A stretch of DNA of 64,000 bases, taken from positions 1,410,672-1,474,671 of the forward strand of contig NW_003314268.1 of assembly GCF_000143415.4 (NCBI RefSeq), given 5' to 3'. This stretch comes from Selaginella moellendorffii (Eukaryota > Plantae > Lycopodiophyta). Position numbers and translations under genes: made by a program. Shown one piece after another: positions 29,157 to 35,843 of the stretch (position 1 is the stretch's first letter; every line of letters starts with the position of its first letter). The notes beneath the pieces were generated by a model. The model was not told the origin of the DNA. It searched no databases and worked only from the letters and a program-made list of their open reading frames with translations.

Positions 29157-32100
29157 TTACCAAAATTCTCCACAAGAGCACGCTCCATCTCTAAACACAT
29201 GAAACCGACTCGAGTCTCTACACACGATGGTCCGTCGCTCCAGCTTGGAGATCACAGCCGTCGCCCTGTGACAATCCTCGCAAACCCGGAGATTCTTAGA
29301 GATCCTTATGTCCGTCCCGGCCACCGAGTTGACAAGCGCGCAAGCTATGGCGAGCCTCTCGCTGTGTCCACATAGTGCCGACTCTTTCTCCTCCTCGGAT
29401 ATGTCGTGCACGACGCTCTTCGTGTCTGGAACGTATCCCCCCTCCTCCTTCATCCTCAAAGTCACTGCTTTGAGCCTCGCGGAGATCTCTTCCGCCTGAG
29501 GATGGCTCGAGTCTCCCGCCGAGAACCTGTGCACTGTCCCAGCTCCATCGATCCACCAGCTTTGCCCCGGCTTCTTCCAAGCTCGAGCAGCCCTTCTCAA
29601 GCTCCGGATCTCGCCACTCTCCTCCCACATCCCCGCGCTCGCGTAGATGCTTGCCATGAGCGAGTAGGCTCCAGCGTCTTTGTCGTCCAGGCTCACCACC
29701 GAGTCGAAAGCAAGCCTCCCAACTCTCACGTTGCTCCACTTCCGGCTCGCGGCGAGCACGGACATCCACACCGTCGTGTCCGGCTTGAAAGGCATCGTCT
29801 CCAGCATCTCCACGGCCTTGTCCAGCTGATTGGCTCGACCCAGGAGATCCACCATGCAGGTGTAGTGTTCCAGCAGCGGAGCTATCGAGAACTCCCGGCT
29901 CATCATCTCAAAGTAGAGCTTGCCTTCGTCGACCAGGCCGGCATGGCTGCAGAGTGATAGGAGGTGGACGAAAGTGATCGCGTCCGGCCTCACGTTTTCC
30001 CTTCGCATCCTCTCGAACAGCTCAAAAGCCTGCTTTGCGTCGCATTGGTGGCTGTATCCGGCCATGAGAGTGCTCCAAGTTACCAAGTCTCTTGCCGTGG
30101 AAGAGTCGAAAACTTGCTGCGCTTCCACCATGCTTCCACACCTCCCGTAGAAAGCCACGAGAGAATTCACCACAAGCCGATCGTTCTCGAGGCCGGCCTT
30201 GCGAATCTCGTCGTGGACGTTCTTCCCGGCCTCCAAGTCCGGCAAACTTCCACAGGCCTTGACCGCTGCTACGAAAATTGGAGGCGTAACTGGAACCAGC
30301 TTCTCCTCTCGGATGCGAGCGTAGTACTGGAGAGCCAAGTCGGCCTCTCCACTCTGAGCACACCCCCAAATCATCGTCGTCCACGAAACGACGTCTCGGA
30401 GCTTCATCCTCTCAAACAGCTGCCGAGCATCGGGCACGCTTCCGCACTTCACGTACATGTCGAGAAGATTGTTGGCGACGATCATGTCGGATTCATAGCC
30501 AGCTTTGCGAAGTTGGGTGTGGATCTCCAGTCCCTTCTTCAAACTCTCAGCTTTTACTATTCTTCCGTCAACCTGCTTGCCAGTTTCCTTGGCCGCTAGA
30601 CTCGTGCAAGCGTTCACTGCCGTGACGTAAGTTCTCCCGTCGGGAACAAAGCCTTCCTCTTGCATTCGAGCAAACGAGGAGAGAGCAAAGTCGCCATCTC
30701 CACTCTCAGCATGCCCCCAGATCATTGCTGTCCAGGAAACTAAGTCGTGCCGAGGCATCCTGTTGAAAACCTTGCCCGCATCTTCCATGCTTCGACACTT
30801 CGCATACATGTCGACGAGGCTGCTCGCCACGAACATATCCAGTTCGCAGCTGCTCTTCGAAACCTGCGAGTGGATTCTCCGGGCTCTTTCTAAACTCTCT
30901 GCCTTGACATGCCTTCCTCCCACTTCCCTGGCTTCTTCTCTGGCTGCTATAGCCGTGCAAGCGTTGATGGCAGCGACAAAAGTTCTTGAGTCGGGCACCA
31001 GTCCTGCTTGGTCTTGCATCGTAGTGAAGAGCCGGAGAGCACTCTCTCCATCTCCACAAGCTGCGTATCCCATGATAATCGAGTTCCAAGTCACCAAGTC
31101 CCGCTTTTCCATGCAGTCGAATACTCTCCTTGCCTCACGAACGCTGCCACACTTGGCATACATGTCCAGCAGCGTGTTAGCGACAAAGATGTCATGCTCG
31201 TATCCGCTACTCGAGAGCTGAGCGTGGATGGCTCGGCCTCTCTCCAGGCAAATCTCTCGTAGCTTTGTTCTCGGATCCGCCGCTGCTAAGGTCGAGCATG
31301 CGTTGAGTGCAGCGACATAAGTTCTCGCGTCGGGCTGGAAGCCTCTTTCCTGCATGGCAGAGAAGAGATTAAAAGCCTCATTGGCATCTCCAGATTGTGC
31401 GTACCCGGTGATGATCGCGTTCCATGACACAACGTCGTGCCTTTGCATTCGATCGAAGACCCTCTTCGTCTGGACCATGCTGCCACACTTGGAGTACATG
31501 TCCACCAGTGTGCTTGAAACGTAGATGTTGGTTTCGTGGCCTCGGCTGGCGAGCTCGGAGTGTAAAGCCGCTCCTCTCTTCAAACTTTCCACCTTGACGA
31601 GATTTCCATCCACCTGCTTGGCTTGCTCCTTGAGAGCCAGGCTCGTGCAGGCTTTCAAAGCCGCGACGAACGTCCGAGGGTCTGGAACGAAGCCTTTCTC
31701 TTGCATCTCGGCGAAGAACTCGAGAGCCAACTCCCCTTGATCGGCCTGGACAAATCCCATAATCATCGTGTTCCACGACGAGACTGTGCGATTCGGCATC
31801 TTCTCGAAGAACTCGCGAGCGCGATCCAGACTACCGCACTTGGCGAACATGTCTAGCACCGTGTTGGCCACAAAGATGTGCAAGCCTTTCTTCTCTTCTC
31901 CATTCCCATCGCTGCCGTGCTCTTCCAGAATCTCGCCCAAGATCCTGATCCCTGTGGCCAAATCCCTGGCGCTGGTACACGCCTTCAACGCCGCAAGAAC
32001 CACGGCATTGCTGGCCATGATTCCATCGCCGCGGAGCTGATCGTAGACCCCGATCGGGTCCTGCTGCCCTGACGCACCCTGATTGCGCCGCCCAACGGCA

Positions 32101-32180
32101 TTCTTCCTCCTCACACCTCCTACCTCGCGCAAGCTGGGAATCGTCCTGTATCGCCTGAGAAGAGCGCGCCGCAAGAGCAT
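29157..32180 (-). CDS. PLS-class PPR-DYW cytidine deaminase of the DYW:WW subtype (ends EFW), single exon
   Basis: PLS arrays, E domain, KKPGQSWWIDGAG.VH PG-box with WW, HSERLA, CEDCH, RDSSRFHVFRDGACSCGEFW. First ATG 32180 followed by an Arg-rich targeting-like peptide. Confidence 0.95.
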   Translation of the reverse strand: MLLRRALLRRYRTIPSLREVGGVRRKNAVGRRNQGASGQQDPIGVYDQLRGDGIMASNAVVLAALKACTSARDLATGIRILGEILEEHGSDGNGEEKKGLHIFVANTVLDMFAKCGSLDRAREFFEKMPNRTVSSWNTMIMGFVQADQGELALEFFAEMQEKGFVPDPRTFVAALKACTSLALKEQAKQVDGNLVKVESLKRGAALHSELASRGHETNIYVSSTLVDMYSKCGSMVQTKRVFDRMQRHDVVSWNAIITGYAQSGDANEAFNLFSAMQERGFQPDARTYVAALNACSTLAAADPRTKLREICLERGRAIHAQLSSSGYEHDIFVANTLLDMYAKCGSVREARRVFDCMEKRDLVTWNSIIMGYAACGDGESALRLFTTMQDQAGLVPDSRTFVAAINACTAIAAREEAREVGGRHVKAESLERARRIHSQVSKSSCELDMFVASSLVDMYAKCRSMEDAGKVFNRMPRHDLVSWTAMIWGHAESGDGDFALSSFARMQEEGFVPDGRTYVTAVNACTSLAAKETGKQVDGRIVKAESLKKGLEIHTQLRKAGYESDMIVANNLLDMYVKCGSVPDARQLFERMKLRDVVSWTTMIWGCAQSGEADLALQYYARIREEKLVPVTPPIFVAAVKACGSLPDLEAGKNVHDEIRKAGLENDRLVVNSLVAFYGRCGSMVEAQQVFDSSTARDLVTWSTLMAGYSHQCDAKQAFELFERMRRENVRPDAITFVHLLSLCSHAGLVDEGKLYFEMMSREFSIAPLLEHYTCMVDLLGRANQLDKAVEMLETMPFKPDTTVWMSVLAASRKWSNVRVGRLAFDSVVSLDDKDAGAYSLMASIYASAGMWEESGEIRSLRRAARAWKKPGQSWWIDGAGTVHRFSAGDSSHPQAEEISARLKAVTLRMKEEGGYVPDTKSVVHDISEEEKESALCGHSERLAIACALVNSVAGTDIRISKNLRVCEDCHRATAVISKLERRTIVCRDSSRFHVFRDGACSCGEFW

Positions 32181-32505
32181 GGAGCCTGGCGCTCCAAGCT
32201 CCAAGAACCCTAAAACCAAGTAACCCTAAAGTCCACAAATTTAAAACTTGGCGCGCAAAAGTGTTTTAATTTTAGGGTTCTTGGCGCGCGCTAAACATTC
32301 CCTTCCTTTATAAAACTGCTATAACTAATCCGGCGAGGCGGCGCATCTTGCTTTCACAATCTCCCCACTGTGGCGAGCGTTTCGTTACCGTTTAACACCC
32401 TCCCATGCTCTCCATGCAACGGAAATTCCGGCTGGCCACCATTTAAATCCAGCGCGATGGCATCTCAGCCCACCATTCCAAAGATCATACCACTATTCTC
32501 CTTCC
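32181..32505. promoter_or_regulatory. Short divergent promoter between DYW-PPR and CLE gene
   Basis: 325 bp between head-to-head ATGs; telo-box-like AACCCTAA/TTAGGGTT copies near 32205-32280; TATAAAA near 32308 on the + strand. Confidence 0.5.
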
Positions 32506-33321
32506 ATGGCGCTAGAGCTCCAATCGCTCATCCTTTTCTTCTTCATGGCTTTGCTATGCTGCTACGCACTGGAATCTCGAGGTAAGCAGCAGCTCCCTCC
32601 ACTCTCGATCGCCCAGTATCGATCTTAACTTTCGTTGGTTTTTTCGTTGCCAGATCCAGGAACTTCGCGTAAACTTCTTCTCCGCGATCGCGAGGAACAG
32701 CCGGAGAGGCTCATTCCTTCCGGCCCCTCGGATCCAAAGCAGTACCAAAACTCGATCAGTCAGGCGGCTTGCCGCAAAGAATTCGGCATCGGGATCCCTG
32801 CGCCACCCTCCGGCAATCACCACCTCGAGCGAGAAGTTCCCACTGGACCGGAAGATCCATTCCAGCGCCTCAAGGACTTCGTTGCGTGCTGGAACTCGGC
32901 CGTCGGCAAGCCTCACCACGATGTCTTGACGCATCGATCTCAATCCATCCCAGTAACTTCATCTTCTTCCAAGGACTCTATCCCAGTTCCACCAGCAGCT
33001 TCTTCTTCCAAGAATTCTATCCCAGTTCCAGGAGCAGCTTCTTTTTCCAAGGATCCTATCCCAGTTCCAGCAGCAGCTTTTTCGTCCAAGGATTCTATCC
33101 CAGTTCCTTCTTCCAAGGATTCTATCTCAGTTCCAGTAGCAACGGATTCTTCTCAATCTGGTCCAGCAACTTCTTCCATAAATGCTATCCCAGCAGCTCG
33201 TTCTATCCCACCTCCAACTTTCAAGGACGATCCTTCCAGCAAGCAGCTCAATGCCATCCAACCCGAGAGGCAAGTTCCCTCTGGAGCCGATCCGATCCAT
33301 CACAAATCCCTGGAACCCTGA
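32506..33321 (+). CDS. CLE: Secreted CLE peptide precursor, 247 aa, 2 exons (32506-32581, 32654-33321), with one canonical and two variant CLE motifs
   Basis: Exon 1 encodes signal peptide MALELQSLILFFFMALLCCYALESR, then GTAAG...CAG phase-1 intron. C-terminal RQVPSGADPIHH (33268-33303) fits the CLE consensus RxVPSGPDPxHH; further motifs RLIPSGPSDPKQY and REVPTGPEDPFQR. Confidence 0.88.
32944..33200 (+). repeat. Coding 39-bp minisatellite (SSSKDSIPVPxAA), about 5-6 degenerate units
   Basis: Units such as TCTTCTTCCAAGGACTCTATCCCAGTTCCACCAGCAGCT at 32962, 33001, 33040, 33079 and shorter copies after. Confidence 0.9.
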
Positions 33322-33524
33322 CACTCTAGCTGACACTTTTTCTATCCTCTCCCTTTGTTTTCCTGTCGCCGAGCCAAAGTTTTGCTACAGAGACTAGCTT
33401 GGCCTGTAAAAATTTCTCTAATCATTAGAGAAGGAAAAGAATACGAGAAAGACGTACCTTGTCAATCTCAAACCGAGGACGTGCATCTGTTGGAGAAAAT
33501 ATAAATTTCGTCTCCATTGGATAG

Positions 33525-35843
33525 TTAGCTCCTAAGAGGTGCGCTACTGTAGCCCGGATGTTGCTGCGAGCGTAGAATCATTCCAGTCATGGAAGGCGTC
33601 TGATAGTCTCGATTGTATGAGTATCCTCTCGTCGTGGCTCGCTGTGAGAAATGCGAGCTTTGAGCCGAGAGAATGTACGCTCGACCACTTCTCTCGTAGA
33701 GCTGCCTGTTTCCAATCCTCTCCTGAATTTCTCCAAGCTCGGACTCAAGCGCCTTGGAGAGTTTGTCACCACCTTGCCACGAAAGCGAGGCTTGGATTAG
33801 CTGCTGAGTTGCTCGAAGACACGTCTGAGCTGCCTCGATGTCACCGGAATCTGCCAAAAAACCAGCCTCGGAGATCGTCTTTGCTGCCAGCAGCCGGTTC
33901 CTTTGTCGATCAACTTCCACGCTAACATGTTGCCGGTTGGCGCTCACGAAATCCGGACGAGCGATCGAGAGCTTCCGGGACGCAGTGTGAAGCTTCTCTC
34001 CACGTACTGGATCGGTGAAAGAGCACCTAGCTTCGAGGATAAACTGTTCCTTGAGGCTGAAGTTGAGTGCCGGGAGCTTAATCTCCAGAAGAACGTCTCG
34101 TTCCTCGTCGGCATAGAGATCCCCCAGCTTCACGGTTGCTCGTGACGAATCCTCCACGACCGAGCTTCTGTAGCTGCCAGCATGAACGCTCGTTATCCGA
34201 GACCCTCCGGCCTCACATCCTCCAAAGACTACCAGCTGAACGTCCTGGACGACAACGCTTAGAAGTCCCCCGACGCACTGAGCAAAAGCGTCCTGGACGC
34301 CACCTTCTGCCTGGATAAACGAGAAGGTTCCTCCCGAGACTTGAGAAATGGAGTGCATGGTCGCAGCGTCGTGATCAGCTCCGAATCCGAAAGTGTGGAC
34401 TGGAATGCGTGGCGATATCTGTCCGCTGTTGCTCAACCGTCGTGACAGTAGCTTGTGACGGTTGAAGCTGGAGCTTGGAGAGGAGTTGAAAACCTGGCCC
34501 CGAGTTCCCAGCGAGTAAGTGTCATGTCCGTCGGAGAGCAGCATTATACTCGCGACTGGATTCTTGTGCTGCCTCTCTTCCAAAACTTTCGATCCTTTGC
34601 GCAGCCCCTCGGCAATGTTCGTTCCTCCGGTGCAAACCAACGTCTCCACTGCTCGCAGCGCGAACTGCCGGCCTTCCTCCACCATAGTCTTGAGCGGGAA
34701 GAGCCTCTTTGCTGACGAGGAAAACACCACCACCGAGAGACGGTCCCGGGAGCTTAAGTTGCGGATCACAAACGCCATTGCTCGCTTGAGGAGCAAGAGC
34801 TTTGTCCCTGCCATGCTTCCGCTCACGTCCAGGACTGTCACTAGATCGATCGGCGCTCGATCCAAGACTGCTGGTTCTGTCCCGGAATCGAGAAGCTCCG
34901 GAGCTTTGACGTGAACCAGGACGTTGAAACTGTTCCGCTGCTCCGAGAATGACACGCTGCCAACTTCTGCGTAAGCGCTGAGCTCGAGCTTGGATCTTTG
35001 CTCGGACGAAGTCACATTTTCTGGAAACTCATCGTCGCAAGAGCCTTGGTTGGCGAGAGCTTCGTCATCGTCGTAAACGAGAGGTTCTATGGCTTGATGC
35101 TGCTGCTGCTGTTGCCTCGAGGGTGGCGACGCTCGACTGATTTCTTGAGTGGCATTGGCGTTTGCGATCGACTCGTCAATGATTCGTATGACGGGGTCCT
35201 GTTCCTCGTGTTGTTGTTGTTGTTCTTGGCGGAGAAGCTCATTGAAACTTGGCAGCGACGATGGTGGTGGGATGACGAGTGGCGGTGGCGGGGTCGAGGA
35301 TCTCTTGGGCTTGTTCGTGTCTGGAAGAGGGCCGTGCCATGGAACTTCCTTCCACCGGGATCGACACACGGGACACACCATGTTGCCGTGCTTCACGTTG
35401 GACGCAATGCACGAGAAGTGGAAGGTGTGCGAGCACTCGGCTGTGAAGAGGGCCTGTCCAACCCCGGTTTTGATAGCTTCCAGGCAGATCGGGCAAGAAC
35501 TCTGCAAGGAATCACACAAAGAACGATCAAAGATCGCGAAAAAAGAGAAGAGAGAGAGACAAGTAAGAACGCTACCCACAGCTAGACTCGACTAGAAAGA
35601 AGAAAACTATGATAAATATATCTTCTCGATCGAAAAGGAGGAATGCTTCTAATCCAGAGGAGAGCTTTGGATCTAGAGGTCTAAGAAGCATACCTTGATG
35701 GATGATCGTGCCGGCGTTGCCGGCCGGCCTTGGAAATCCCATTCTTCGTCGGATGGAAAGCCCTCGGAATCGGCCGGGAATGTCCAAGAACACATGCGCA
35801 ATCCAAGAACGCTCCTGGCGACGCTCCAGACCTTCTTCCCCAT
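33525..35843 (-). CDS. RING-finger + vWA + Vwaint protein (E3 ligase, At5g60710/WAV3-related family), 2 exons
   Basis: Exon 1 MGKKVWSVARSVLGLRMC...; CPICL...TAECSHTFHFSCI...CPVCR RING; DLVTVLDVSGSM MIDAS; LLSDG; C-terminal HFSQRATT...YQTPSM. Confidence 0.92.

What the first reader, a model, noticed from the sequence alone, without database searches (positions are those of the whole stretch)
32506..33321. Multi-motif CLE precursor: one canonical CLE plus two atypical 13-residue CLE-like peptides
Seen: splicing a signal-peptide exon that the ORF track missed onto ORF 32635 gives a 247-aa secreted protein. It carries canonical RQVPSGADPIHH at the C-terminus and two related motifs, RLIPSGPSDPKQY (32707-32745) and REVPTGPEDPFQR (32830-32868). 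All three follow an acidic residue (QPER, LER, QPER). Both variants have one extra residue between GP and DP and lack the terminal H/N. Established: CLE peptides are 12-13 aa, are cut before the Arg, and need the C-terminal H/N for receptor binding; multi-CLE precursors exist but are uncommon. Inference: the gene may co-produce an agonist and structurally distinct peptides (antagonists or ligands for other LRR-RLKs), or it may be an intermediate in the birth of a new peptide family.
Basis: partly seen in the sequence, partly recalled or inferred. Interest (0 to 1): 0.85.

Follow-up and report, generated by a model that had tools for sequence, protein, structure and literature searches.

The report
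Spikemoss CLE7 precursor with conserved variant motifs
This is the known spikemoss peptide-hormone gene SmCLE7; its two odd 13-residue CLE-like motifs are real and are kept by selection, because a second secreted protein without a normal CLE peptide carries them too, but no sense transcript was found and their function is untested.

Summary
Exon 1 (32506-32581) joined to exon 2 (32654-33321) gives a 247-aa protein: signal peptide, RLIPSGPSDPKQY, REVPTGPEDPFQR, a Ser/Pro-rich repeat and C-terminal RQVPSGADPIHH.

The gene is not new. It is Selaginella moellendorffii SmCLE7 (GenBank BAH56538.1, same splice junction, start at Met14) and JGI Sm86322.

What I did not find described:
- The two variant motifs, plus SRKL, two Cys and CW..KPH, recur in a 113-aa secreted paralog, LOC112346529. 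That protein ends without a canonical CLE and lies 1.5 kb from the CLE gene Sm411648.
- Between the paralogs, synonymous sites are saturated. The motifs have dN 0.22; the rest has dN 0.97.
- The one-residue insertion and the missing terminal H/N are therefore selected features of a CLE-derived module, not decay.

Expression is unsupported. In one stranded RNA-seq run every read over the locus is antisense, from the long 3'UTR of the convergent RING/vWA gene. No 32581/32654 junction was seen.

No relative was found outside this species, in databases that may hold few other lycophyte proteins. Whether the variants are released as peptides or act within a two-Cys module is open.

The scan noted what is probably the allelic copy before (s1-420840).

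The parts
32506..32581 (+). Exon 1: MALELQSLILFFFMALLCCYALESR plus 1 nt; signal peptide with the 15-residue hydrophobic core LILFFFMALLCCYAL. GenBank SmCLE7 starts at the second Met (32545).
   Evidence: The ATG and both splice sites are identical in the other haplotype. The exon resembles the signal-peptide exon of CLE gene Sm411648.
32582..32653 (+). 72-nt phase-1 GT..AG intron directly after the signal peptide.
   Evidence: The intron has the same position and phase in the paralog P0008 (exon 1 of 88 nt) and in Sm411648 (79 nt). No junction read was seen.
32654..33321 (+). Exon 2: 222 codons without any Met, up to stop 33319-33321.
   Evidence: Between haplotypes, exons plus intron (32506-33321) show 7 substitutions in 816 nt and only 3n indels, against 26 in 608 nt of flank (Fisher p=2e-5).
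32665..32676 (+). SRKL motif just after the signal peptide. It is shared with P0008 (SRKL), Sm411648 (ARKL) and Sm409888 (SRKL).
32701..32745 (+). Variant motif 1 with its flank: PE-RLIPSGPSDPKQY. The paralog has PE-REAPSGPDDPEQY.
   Evidence: 9/13 identical, with synonymous changes at the conserved P, E, R, P, P and P codons.
32770..32772 (+). Conserved Cys 1, the ninth residue after motif 1 in both paralogs.
32827..32868 (+). Variant motif 2 with its flank: E-REVPTGPEDPFQR. The paralog has D-RDVPNGPEDPYSS.
   Evidence: 8/13 identical.
32887..32916 (+). Conserved Cys 2-Trp, then KPH (CWNSAVGKPH here, CWKPH in the paralog). This is the end of the shared module.
32962..33155 (+). In-frame minisatellite (39 nt x 3.7 and 27 nt x 2-2.6) encoding SSKDSIPVP-type Ser/Pro-rich repeats. 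It is length-polymorphic between haplotypes (+6 and +9 nt).
   Evidence: It is the source of all low-complexity hits.
33259..33318 (+). QPE-RQVPSGADPIHH-KSLEP: canonical R-type, HH-ending CLE dodecapeptide (33268-33303) with the same QPER flank as motif 1.
   Evidence: listed as the CLE motif of Sm86322, Group 5B; SmCLE7.
32280..33524 (-). Antisense transcript: 3'UTR of the convergent RING/vWA gene (CDS 33525-35579, minus strand), with a 54-nt GT..AG intron at about 33404-33457. It covers the whole CLE gene.
   Evidence: all 198 reads have the first mate on plus, as over the RING CDS. There is a CT..AC joint 33402>33457. A 3001-nt contig joins 32280-33402 and 33457-33700.

Best explanation
The locus is SmCLE7 (Sm86322), a two-exon CLE precursor gene of Selaginella moellendorffii. 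The product has four parts: a signal peptide; an N-terminal module; a polymorphic Ser/Pro-rich repeat linker; and a C-terminal canonical CLE dodecapeptide, RQVPSGADPIHH. The module is SRKL, then two CLE-derived motifs of the form [P][ED]-R-x-[VIA]-P-[STN]-G-P-x-D-P, each followed by a conserved Cys, and it ends in CW..KPH. It is an old, selected offshoot of the CLE motif. It also exists alone as the 113-aa secreted protein LOC112346529/LOC112342690, next to the canonical CLE gene Sm411648. Shown here: the anatomy, the homology, purifying selection on the motifs, coding-like conservation between haplotypes, and the shared intron position and phase. Inferred mechanism: the pre-pro-protein enters the secretory pathway and is cut in front of each Arg of the shared acidic-Arg sites, probably by the same kind of subtilase. 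This would release the canonical CLE, a ligand for CLV1/BAM-type receptors, together with CLE-derived peptides. Those peptides have an extra residue after Gly-Pro and no terminal His/Asn, so they should not dock like a CLE and would serve another receptor or modulate binding. The gene is probably expressed weakly or in few cells and lies under an antisense 3'UTR.
For: Gene identity: P0011, 'CLAVATA3/endosperm surrounding region 7', has the same junction. Sm86322 is listed with RQVPSGADPIHH in the PMC7552357 supplement. Module homology: phmmer over 1.84 billion representatives gives P0008 as the only hit that is neither the allele nor in the repeat region (E 6e-4 library-wide). Pairwise BLASTP gives 4e-12 over 91 residues. 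The alignment has 34 invariant columns that include both motifs, both Cys, SRKL and CW/KPH. Selection: motifs dN 0.22 and dS 1.9; the rest dN 0.97 and dS 1.14. CLE ancestry: the P-[ED]-R flank is shared with the canonical motifs of SmCLE7 and Sm411648. The three genes also share a signal-peptide exon, a phase-1 intron and [S/A]RKL. P0008 lies 1.5 kb downstream of Sm411648. Haplotypes: the ORF is 5 times less diverged than its flanks and has only 3n indels, although the 3' flank lies in the same antisense UTR. AlphaFold gives mostly low-confidence, largely unstructured models, as expected of a propeptide. CLE peptides characteristically end in HN or HH (PMC8462819).
Against: There is no sense transcript and no 32581/32654 junction in one stranded RNA-seq run. 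Three contig sets retain the intron. There are no orthologs outside S. moellendorffii, so selection rests on a single paralog pair plus alleles. The conserved Cys lie outside the 13-mers, which suggests a larger functional unit. The C-terminal ends of the putative variant peptides are unknown. No peptide, processing or receptor data exist. The signal peptide was judged by eye, not with SignalP.
Confidence: 0.55

Rival explanations
1. The N-terminal module works as one piece and is not cut into 13-mers. It would be a roughly 70-80-residue element with a Cys-Cys bridge, acting either as a ligand in its own right or as a prodomain that steers folding, trafficking or processing of the CLE. The GPxDP motifs would be turns or helix caps.
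For: Both Cys are invariant, with nearly fixed spacing after each motif, and CW..KPH is conserved. The module exists alone as a complete secreted protein. AlphaFold places a helix right after each DP in SmCLE7, each holding the Cys, with pLDDT up to 75 in one block.
Against: Both models have low confidence (mean pLDDT 53 and 56). The first helix is not reproduced well in P0008, where the Cys sits in SGCGG. Outside the motifs, dN/dS is near 1, with no conserved hydrophobic core. The [ED]-R flank typical of Selaginella CLE cleavage sites is kept at both motifs.
Confidence: 0.27
2. The two variants are decaying relics of an old internal CLE duplication inside the fast-evolving variable domain. 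They have no function of their own, and only the C-terminal CLE matters.
For: They lack the terminal H/N and the canonical spacing. CLE variable domains are generally unconstrained. No ortholog is available to confirm long-term conservation.
Against: With synonymous sites saturated between paralogs, the motifs keep 17 of 26 residues, and both keep the same one-residue insertion. A paralog that lost the canonical CLE kept both motifs.
Confidence: 0.08
3. The locus is no longer an active CLE gene. It would be a silent or dying copy whose DNA now serves only as the 3'UTR of the RING/vWA gene.
For: All RNA seen is antisense and unspliced at the CLE intron. NCBI and JGI pipelines produced only partial or wrong models.
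Against: The ORF is intact in both haplotypes, with only 3n indels and 0.35% (module) and 0% (CLE end) divergence, against 4.4% in the adjoining part of the same UTR. Splice sites and the ATG are conserved. CLE genes are often expressed in very few cells (my own knowledge).
Confidence: 0.1

Closest known systems
Canonical single-motif CLE precursors (CLV3/ESR-related; here SmCLE7 = Sm86322, neighbour family member Sm411648)
   Same: Signal peptide, variable domain, C-terminal 12-residue R-x-V-P-S-G-x-D-P-x-H-H motif with a short tail. The gene is already catalogued as a CLE.
   Different: The variable domain is not free-evolving. It holds a conserved double motif with two Cys that also exists as a separate gene. 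Position 7 of the canonical motif is Ala, not Pro.
Multi-CLE-domain precursors of rice, wheat, Medicago and cyst nematodes (Oelkers et al. 2008, as reviewed in PMC2841256)
   Same: Several CLE-type motifs in one secreted precursor. The review suggests this amplifies or diversifies the signal.
   Different: Those proteins repeat canonical 12-residue motifs. Here only one motif is canonical. The other two share a derived one-residue insertion, lack H/N, are each followed by a Cys, and are not tandem copies of a unit that includes the canonical motif.
IDA/IDL peptides (PSGPS...RHN core; PSGP is shared between IDA and some CLEs, PMC8462819 Figure 8 legend)
   Same: Motif 1 contains IPSGPS, as in the IDA/IDL core.
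   Different: There is no [KR]HN end, and motif 2 has no second Ser. The paralog has PSGPD in place of PSGPS, so the IDA-like Ser is not conserved.
Small Cys-containing secreted peptides (EPF, RALF type; my own knowledge)
   Same: Secreted, with an even number of conserved Cys.
   Different: Only two Cys, no predicted compact fold, and clear CLE ancestry.

Membership tests
CLE (CLV3/ESR-related) precursor: whole gene | N-terminal secretion signal | tested here: met
   A 15-residue uninterrupted hydrophobic core and a small residue at a possible -1 site (CYA|L), judged by eye. It resembles the signal peptide of Sm411648, whose row in the PMC7552357 supplement table carries two unlabelled scores, 0.75 and 0.85 (presumably signal-peptide scores), and the label Extracellular. 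SignalP itself was not available.
CLE (CLV3/ESR-related) precursor: whole gene | 12-13-residue Pro-rich motif near the C-terminus ending in HN or HH | tested here: met
   RQVPSGADPIHH at 33268-33303, 5 residues before the stop. It is listed as a CLE motif in the PMC7552357 supplement. Definition from PMC8462819.
CLE (CLV3/ESR-related) precursor: whole gene | Catalogued as a CLE by others | tested here: met
   BAH56538.1 / C0STN5, 'CLAVATA3/endosperm surrounding region 7'; Sm86322, Group 5B.
CLE (CLV3/ESR-related) precursor: whole gene | Spliced sense mRNA exists | tested here: inconclusive
   One stranded run shows only antisense reads and no junction. Contigs from three other runs retain the intron. 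The tissues are unknown.
CLE peptide: the two variant motifs | C-terminal His/Asn at positions 11-12 | tested here: not met
   The motifs end in KQY and FQR here, and in EQY and YSS in the paralog.
CLE peptide: the two variant motifs | Core spacing P4-[ST]5-G6-P7-[DN]8-P9 | tested here: not met
   There is one extra residue between P7 and D in both motifs and in both paralogs.
CLE peptide: the two variant motifs | Arg (or His) at position 1 after the precursor's cleavage context | tested here: met
   [P][ED]-R precedes all variant and canonical motifs in SmCLE7, P0008 and Sm411648. Cleavage itself was not tested.
Multi-CLE-domain precursor | Two or more canonical CLE motifs in one protein | tested here: not met
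   Only one motif is canonical.
IDA/IDL | PS[GA]PS-x-[KR]HN at the C-terminal end | tested here: not met
   Motif 1 has PSGPS but then DPKQY. The Ser is Asp in the paralog. A second IDA-like string, IPAPPSGNHH (32794-32823), is not conserved in the paralog.
Cys-stabilised secreted mini-protein | Conserved Cys pairs in a predicted compact fold | tested here: inconclusive
   Two invariant Cys, but AlphaFold mean pLDDT is 53 and 56 with pTM 0.32 and 0.21 from very shallow alignments.

The most novel reading that the evidence does not exclude
The GPxDP motifs define a lycophyte-specific class of CLE-derived secreted signals. They have a one-residue insertion and no terminal His/Asn, and each is tethered to a Cys. 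They are made alone (LOC112346529) or together with a canonical CLE from one precursor (SmCLE7). This would be a living example of a new ligand family splitting off from CLE, possibly with its own receptor among the 14 subfamily-XI LRR kinases of Selaginella.
Probability: 0.3. Interest if true: 0.75.

Novelty: new variant of a known kind. Interest (0 to 1): 0.5.

Why it matters
How plant peptide-hormone families diversify, and how CLE relates to other PSGP-type peptides, is an open question (PMC8462819). Lycophyte data are explicitly called for (PMC12605765). In this case a CLE motif has changed its length and lost the receptor-anchoring end, yet it stays under selection, both fused to a canonical CLE and as a free-standing gene. 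This gives concrete peptides to synthesise and test against Selaginella receptors. It also corrects the public models of SmCLE7: the JGI model has a spurious 5' exon, the NCBI model is partial, and the GenBank model starts 13 residues too late for a signal peptide.

Tried and rejected
- Pfam gave no hit for the exon-2 product, the module, P0008 or the Sm411648 C-terminus.
- Three word-indexed searches found only alleles or the query itself: the exon-2 product, P0008, and a profile of both.
- The exhaustive phmmer search otherwise returned only low-complexity matches to the SSKDSIPVP repeats.
- No extra copies of the module lie in the window or within 10 kb of P0008.
- Full-text searches for the motif strings and for SmCLE7 returned nothing relevant.
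- Miwa et al. 2009, which named SmCLE1-15, is not held. I therefore cannot say whether it mentions the extra motifs.
- The IDA-like reading of IPAPPSGNHH was rejected because the string is not conserved in the paralog.
- A compact folded domain was not supported, but also not excluded, by two low-confidence AlphaFold runs. I ran no fold searches on such models.
- The JGI Sm86322 N-terminus was traced to 30350-30450(+), antisense inside the PPR gene, and rejected as a real exon.
- Orthologs in other lycophytes could not be sought, because no plant genome collection is available to the locus-finding tools.

Full report
**Observation.**
- An ATG at 32506 opens a 76-nt exon encoding MALELQSLILFFFMALLCCYALESR. 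A near-consensus donor (CGAG|GTAAGC) follows, then a 72-nt intron with a pyrimidine-rich acceptor (TTGCCAG|).
- Exon 2 (32654-33321) continues in phase. The joined product is 247 aa.
- It carries RLIPSGPSDPKQY (32707-32745), REVPTGPEDPFQR (32830-32868) and RQVPSGADPIHH (33268-33303). Each follows an acidic residue.
- A CLE-core pattern scanned over all six frames of the window hits only these three places.
- The 222-residue exon-2 product has no Met, so any translation of the CLE motif needs an upstream ATG exon.

**Identity.** The window is Selaginella moellendorffii. The other haplotype is on GL377618.1 and is 96% identical in protein. NCBI names it 'flocculation protein FLO11-like, partial'; that model starts inside the intron.
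- The 90% cluster of that protein also holds BAH56538.1 / C0STN5, 'CLAVATA3/endosperm surrounding region 7', i.e. SmCLE7. It is 239 aa and reads MALLCCYALESR|DPGTSRK. So it uses the same exon junction but starts at the second in-frame Met.
- The gene is also Sm86322 in the CLE catalogue of PMC7552357 (Group 5B, motif RQVPSGADPIHH). That JGI model has no Met. Its first 35 residues map to 30350-30450(+), antisense inside the neighbouring DYW-type PPR gene. The exon is spurious, and the model skips the region with the variant motifs.
- The canonical CLE is therefore already known.

**A conserved module.** An exhaustive phmmer search of 1.84 billion representatives returned the allele, six low-complexity matches to the Ser/Pro repeat, and P0008.
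- P0008 is a 113-aa S. moellendorffii protein, LOC112346529. Its allele is LOC112342690. Pairwise BLASTP gives E 4e-12 over 91 residues.
- P0008 has a signal peptide, then SRKL, PE-REAPSGPDDPEQY, a Cys nine residues later, D-RDVPNGPEDPYSS, and CWKPHAR, followed by the stop. It has no canonical CLE.
- The alignment has 34 invariant columns: SRKL, both motifs with the same one-residue insertion, both Cys, CW and KPH.
That is 17/26 against 17/54, Fisher p=0.007.
- At codon level, synonymous sites are saturated (pS 0.6-0.7). The motifs with their flanks have dN 0.22. The rest has dN 0.97, close to neutral.
- Motif 1 resembles motif 1 of the paralog more than it resembles motif 2 of its own protein (9/13 against 7/13). 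So the internal duplication predates the gene duplication.
- The variants are therefore old, selected features and not decay.

**CLE ancestry of the module.** Three things link it to CLE genes.
- The P-[ED]-R flank precedes the variant motifs and also the canonical motifs of SmCLE7 (QPER) and Sm411648 (HPDR).
- SmCLE7, P0008 and Sm411648 all have a signal-peptide exon, a phase-1 intron and then [S/A]RKL. The SmCLE7 signal exon resembles that of Sm411648 at DNA level.
- P0008 lies 1.5 kb downstream of Sm411648 on the same strand.

I cannot tell whether SmCLE7 keeps an ancestral arrangement (module plus CLE) or is a fusion.

**Is the gene alive?** Comparison of the two haplotypes argues for constraint.
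- Exons plus intron (32506-33321) have 7 substitutions in 816 nt and two indels of 6 and 9 nt. The module has 0.35% divergence and the CLE end 0%.
- The flanks have 26 substitutions in 608 nt and indels that are mostly not multiples of three. Fisher p=2e-5.
- The diverged 3' flank (33322-33524) lies in the same antisense UTR, so that UTR does not explain the constraint.

Expression evidence is negative.
- In the one stranded RNA-seq run laid on the locus, all 198 reads have the first mate on the plus strand. The same holds over the minus-strand RING/vWA coding region.
- The only joint (33402>33457) has CT..AC ends, i.e. a GT..AG intron on the minus strand.
- A 3001-nt contig from another run joins 32280-33402 to 33457-33700.
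- The RNA over the CLE gene is therefore the 1.2-kb 3'UTR of the convergent RING/vWA gene. No 32581/32654 junction was seen, and all contigs retain the CLE intron.

**Structure.** AlphaFold on the module (3 rows) and on P0008 (2 rows) gave mean pLDDT 53 and 56.
- Short helices are predicted right after each DP, and each holds the Cys.
- The helices are weak and not well reproduced between the paralogs. Only the signal-peptide helix is confident.
- This fits a disordered propeptide. A disulfide-bridged element is not excluded.

**Mechanism and comparison.**
- Most likely (0.55) this is a multi-product CLE-family precursor. It would be cut before each Arg of the shared acidic-Arg sites, releasing the canonical CLE and CLE-derived peptides.
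- CLE peptides characteristically end in HN or HH (PMC8462819). From my own knowledge of receptor complexes, that end and the Gly6-Pro7 kink anchor the ligand. The inserted residue and the missing H/N therefore argue against CLE-type docking.
- The main rival (0.27) is that the module acts uncut as a Cys-bridged unit or prodomain. The relic and dead-gene readings are less likely.
- It differs from known multi-CLE precursors, which repeat canonical motifs (PMC2841256). It fails the IDA definition.
- The variant motif strings appear in no searchable paper. P0008 and GPxDP motifs are absent from the PMC7552357 lists. Miwa et al. 2009 could not be read.

**Scan context.**
- Note s1-420840 (831 letters: one CLE, two 13-residue variants and an IDA-like motif) is probably the allelic copy. 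The other haplotype is 15 nt longer than the 816-nt gene, which makes 831.
- Its IDA-like string, presumably IPAPPSGNHH, is not conserved in the paralog.
- Note s1-351364 describes a canonical CLE clustered with precursors that share an elongated CLE variant. This matches what I found around P0008, although I cannot confirm it is the same locus.

**Verdict.** The conserved variant module is a new variant of a known kind. Function and expression remain open.

Noticed in passing
window 32280-33524 (-), intron about 33404-33457: The convergent RING/vWA gene (CDS 33525-35579, minus strand) has a 3'UTR of about 1.2 kb with a 54-nt GT..AG intron. The UTR runs antisense across the entire SmCLE7 gene and ends near 32280. 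This makes a natural antisense pair that could affect CLE expression.
   Followed up: partly
window 30350-30450 (+): The first 35 residues of the published JGI model Sm86322 are encoded here, antisense inside the DYW-type PPR gene (ORF 29157-32219, minus strand). This is a spurious 5' exon in a model used in a CLE catalogue.
   Followed up: yes
window 32794-32823 (+): IPAPPSGNHH, between the two variant motifs, looks IDA/CLE-like. The paralog has APSSNDPPAVVAK at this place, so it is not conserved and is probably chance.
   Followed up: yes
window 32962-33155 (+): An in-frame 39-nt and 27-nt minisatellite encodes SSKDSIPVP-type repeats. The haplotypes differ in length by 6 and 9 nt. The repeats may be a Hyp-glycosylated linker.
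   Followed up: partly
window 32200-32292: A 15-nt inverted repeat, CCAAGAACCCTAAAA / TTTTAGGGTTCTTGG, contains telo-box-like AACCCTAA. Each arm is followed by TTGGCGCGC. It lies between the start of the PPR gene and the end of the antisense transcript and is probably made of promoter elements.
   Followed up: no
L003 7855-8451 and 10001-10440 (GL377580.1): The canonical CLE gene Sm411648 (RYVPGGPDPLHH) and the module-only gene LOC112346529 lie 1.5 kb apart on the same strand. Sm411648 has FPRNVPNF in its variable region, a possible relic of the DRDVPNG motif.
   Followed up: partly
window 32370-32585 (+) and 32405-32446: There are upstream ATGs and short ORFs in other frames ahead of the 32506 ATG. 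If the transcript starts near the TATAAAA at about 32309, they would act as uORFs. The stretch 32283-32472 is nearly identical between the haplotypes, while 32473-32496 is rich in indels.
   Followed up: no
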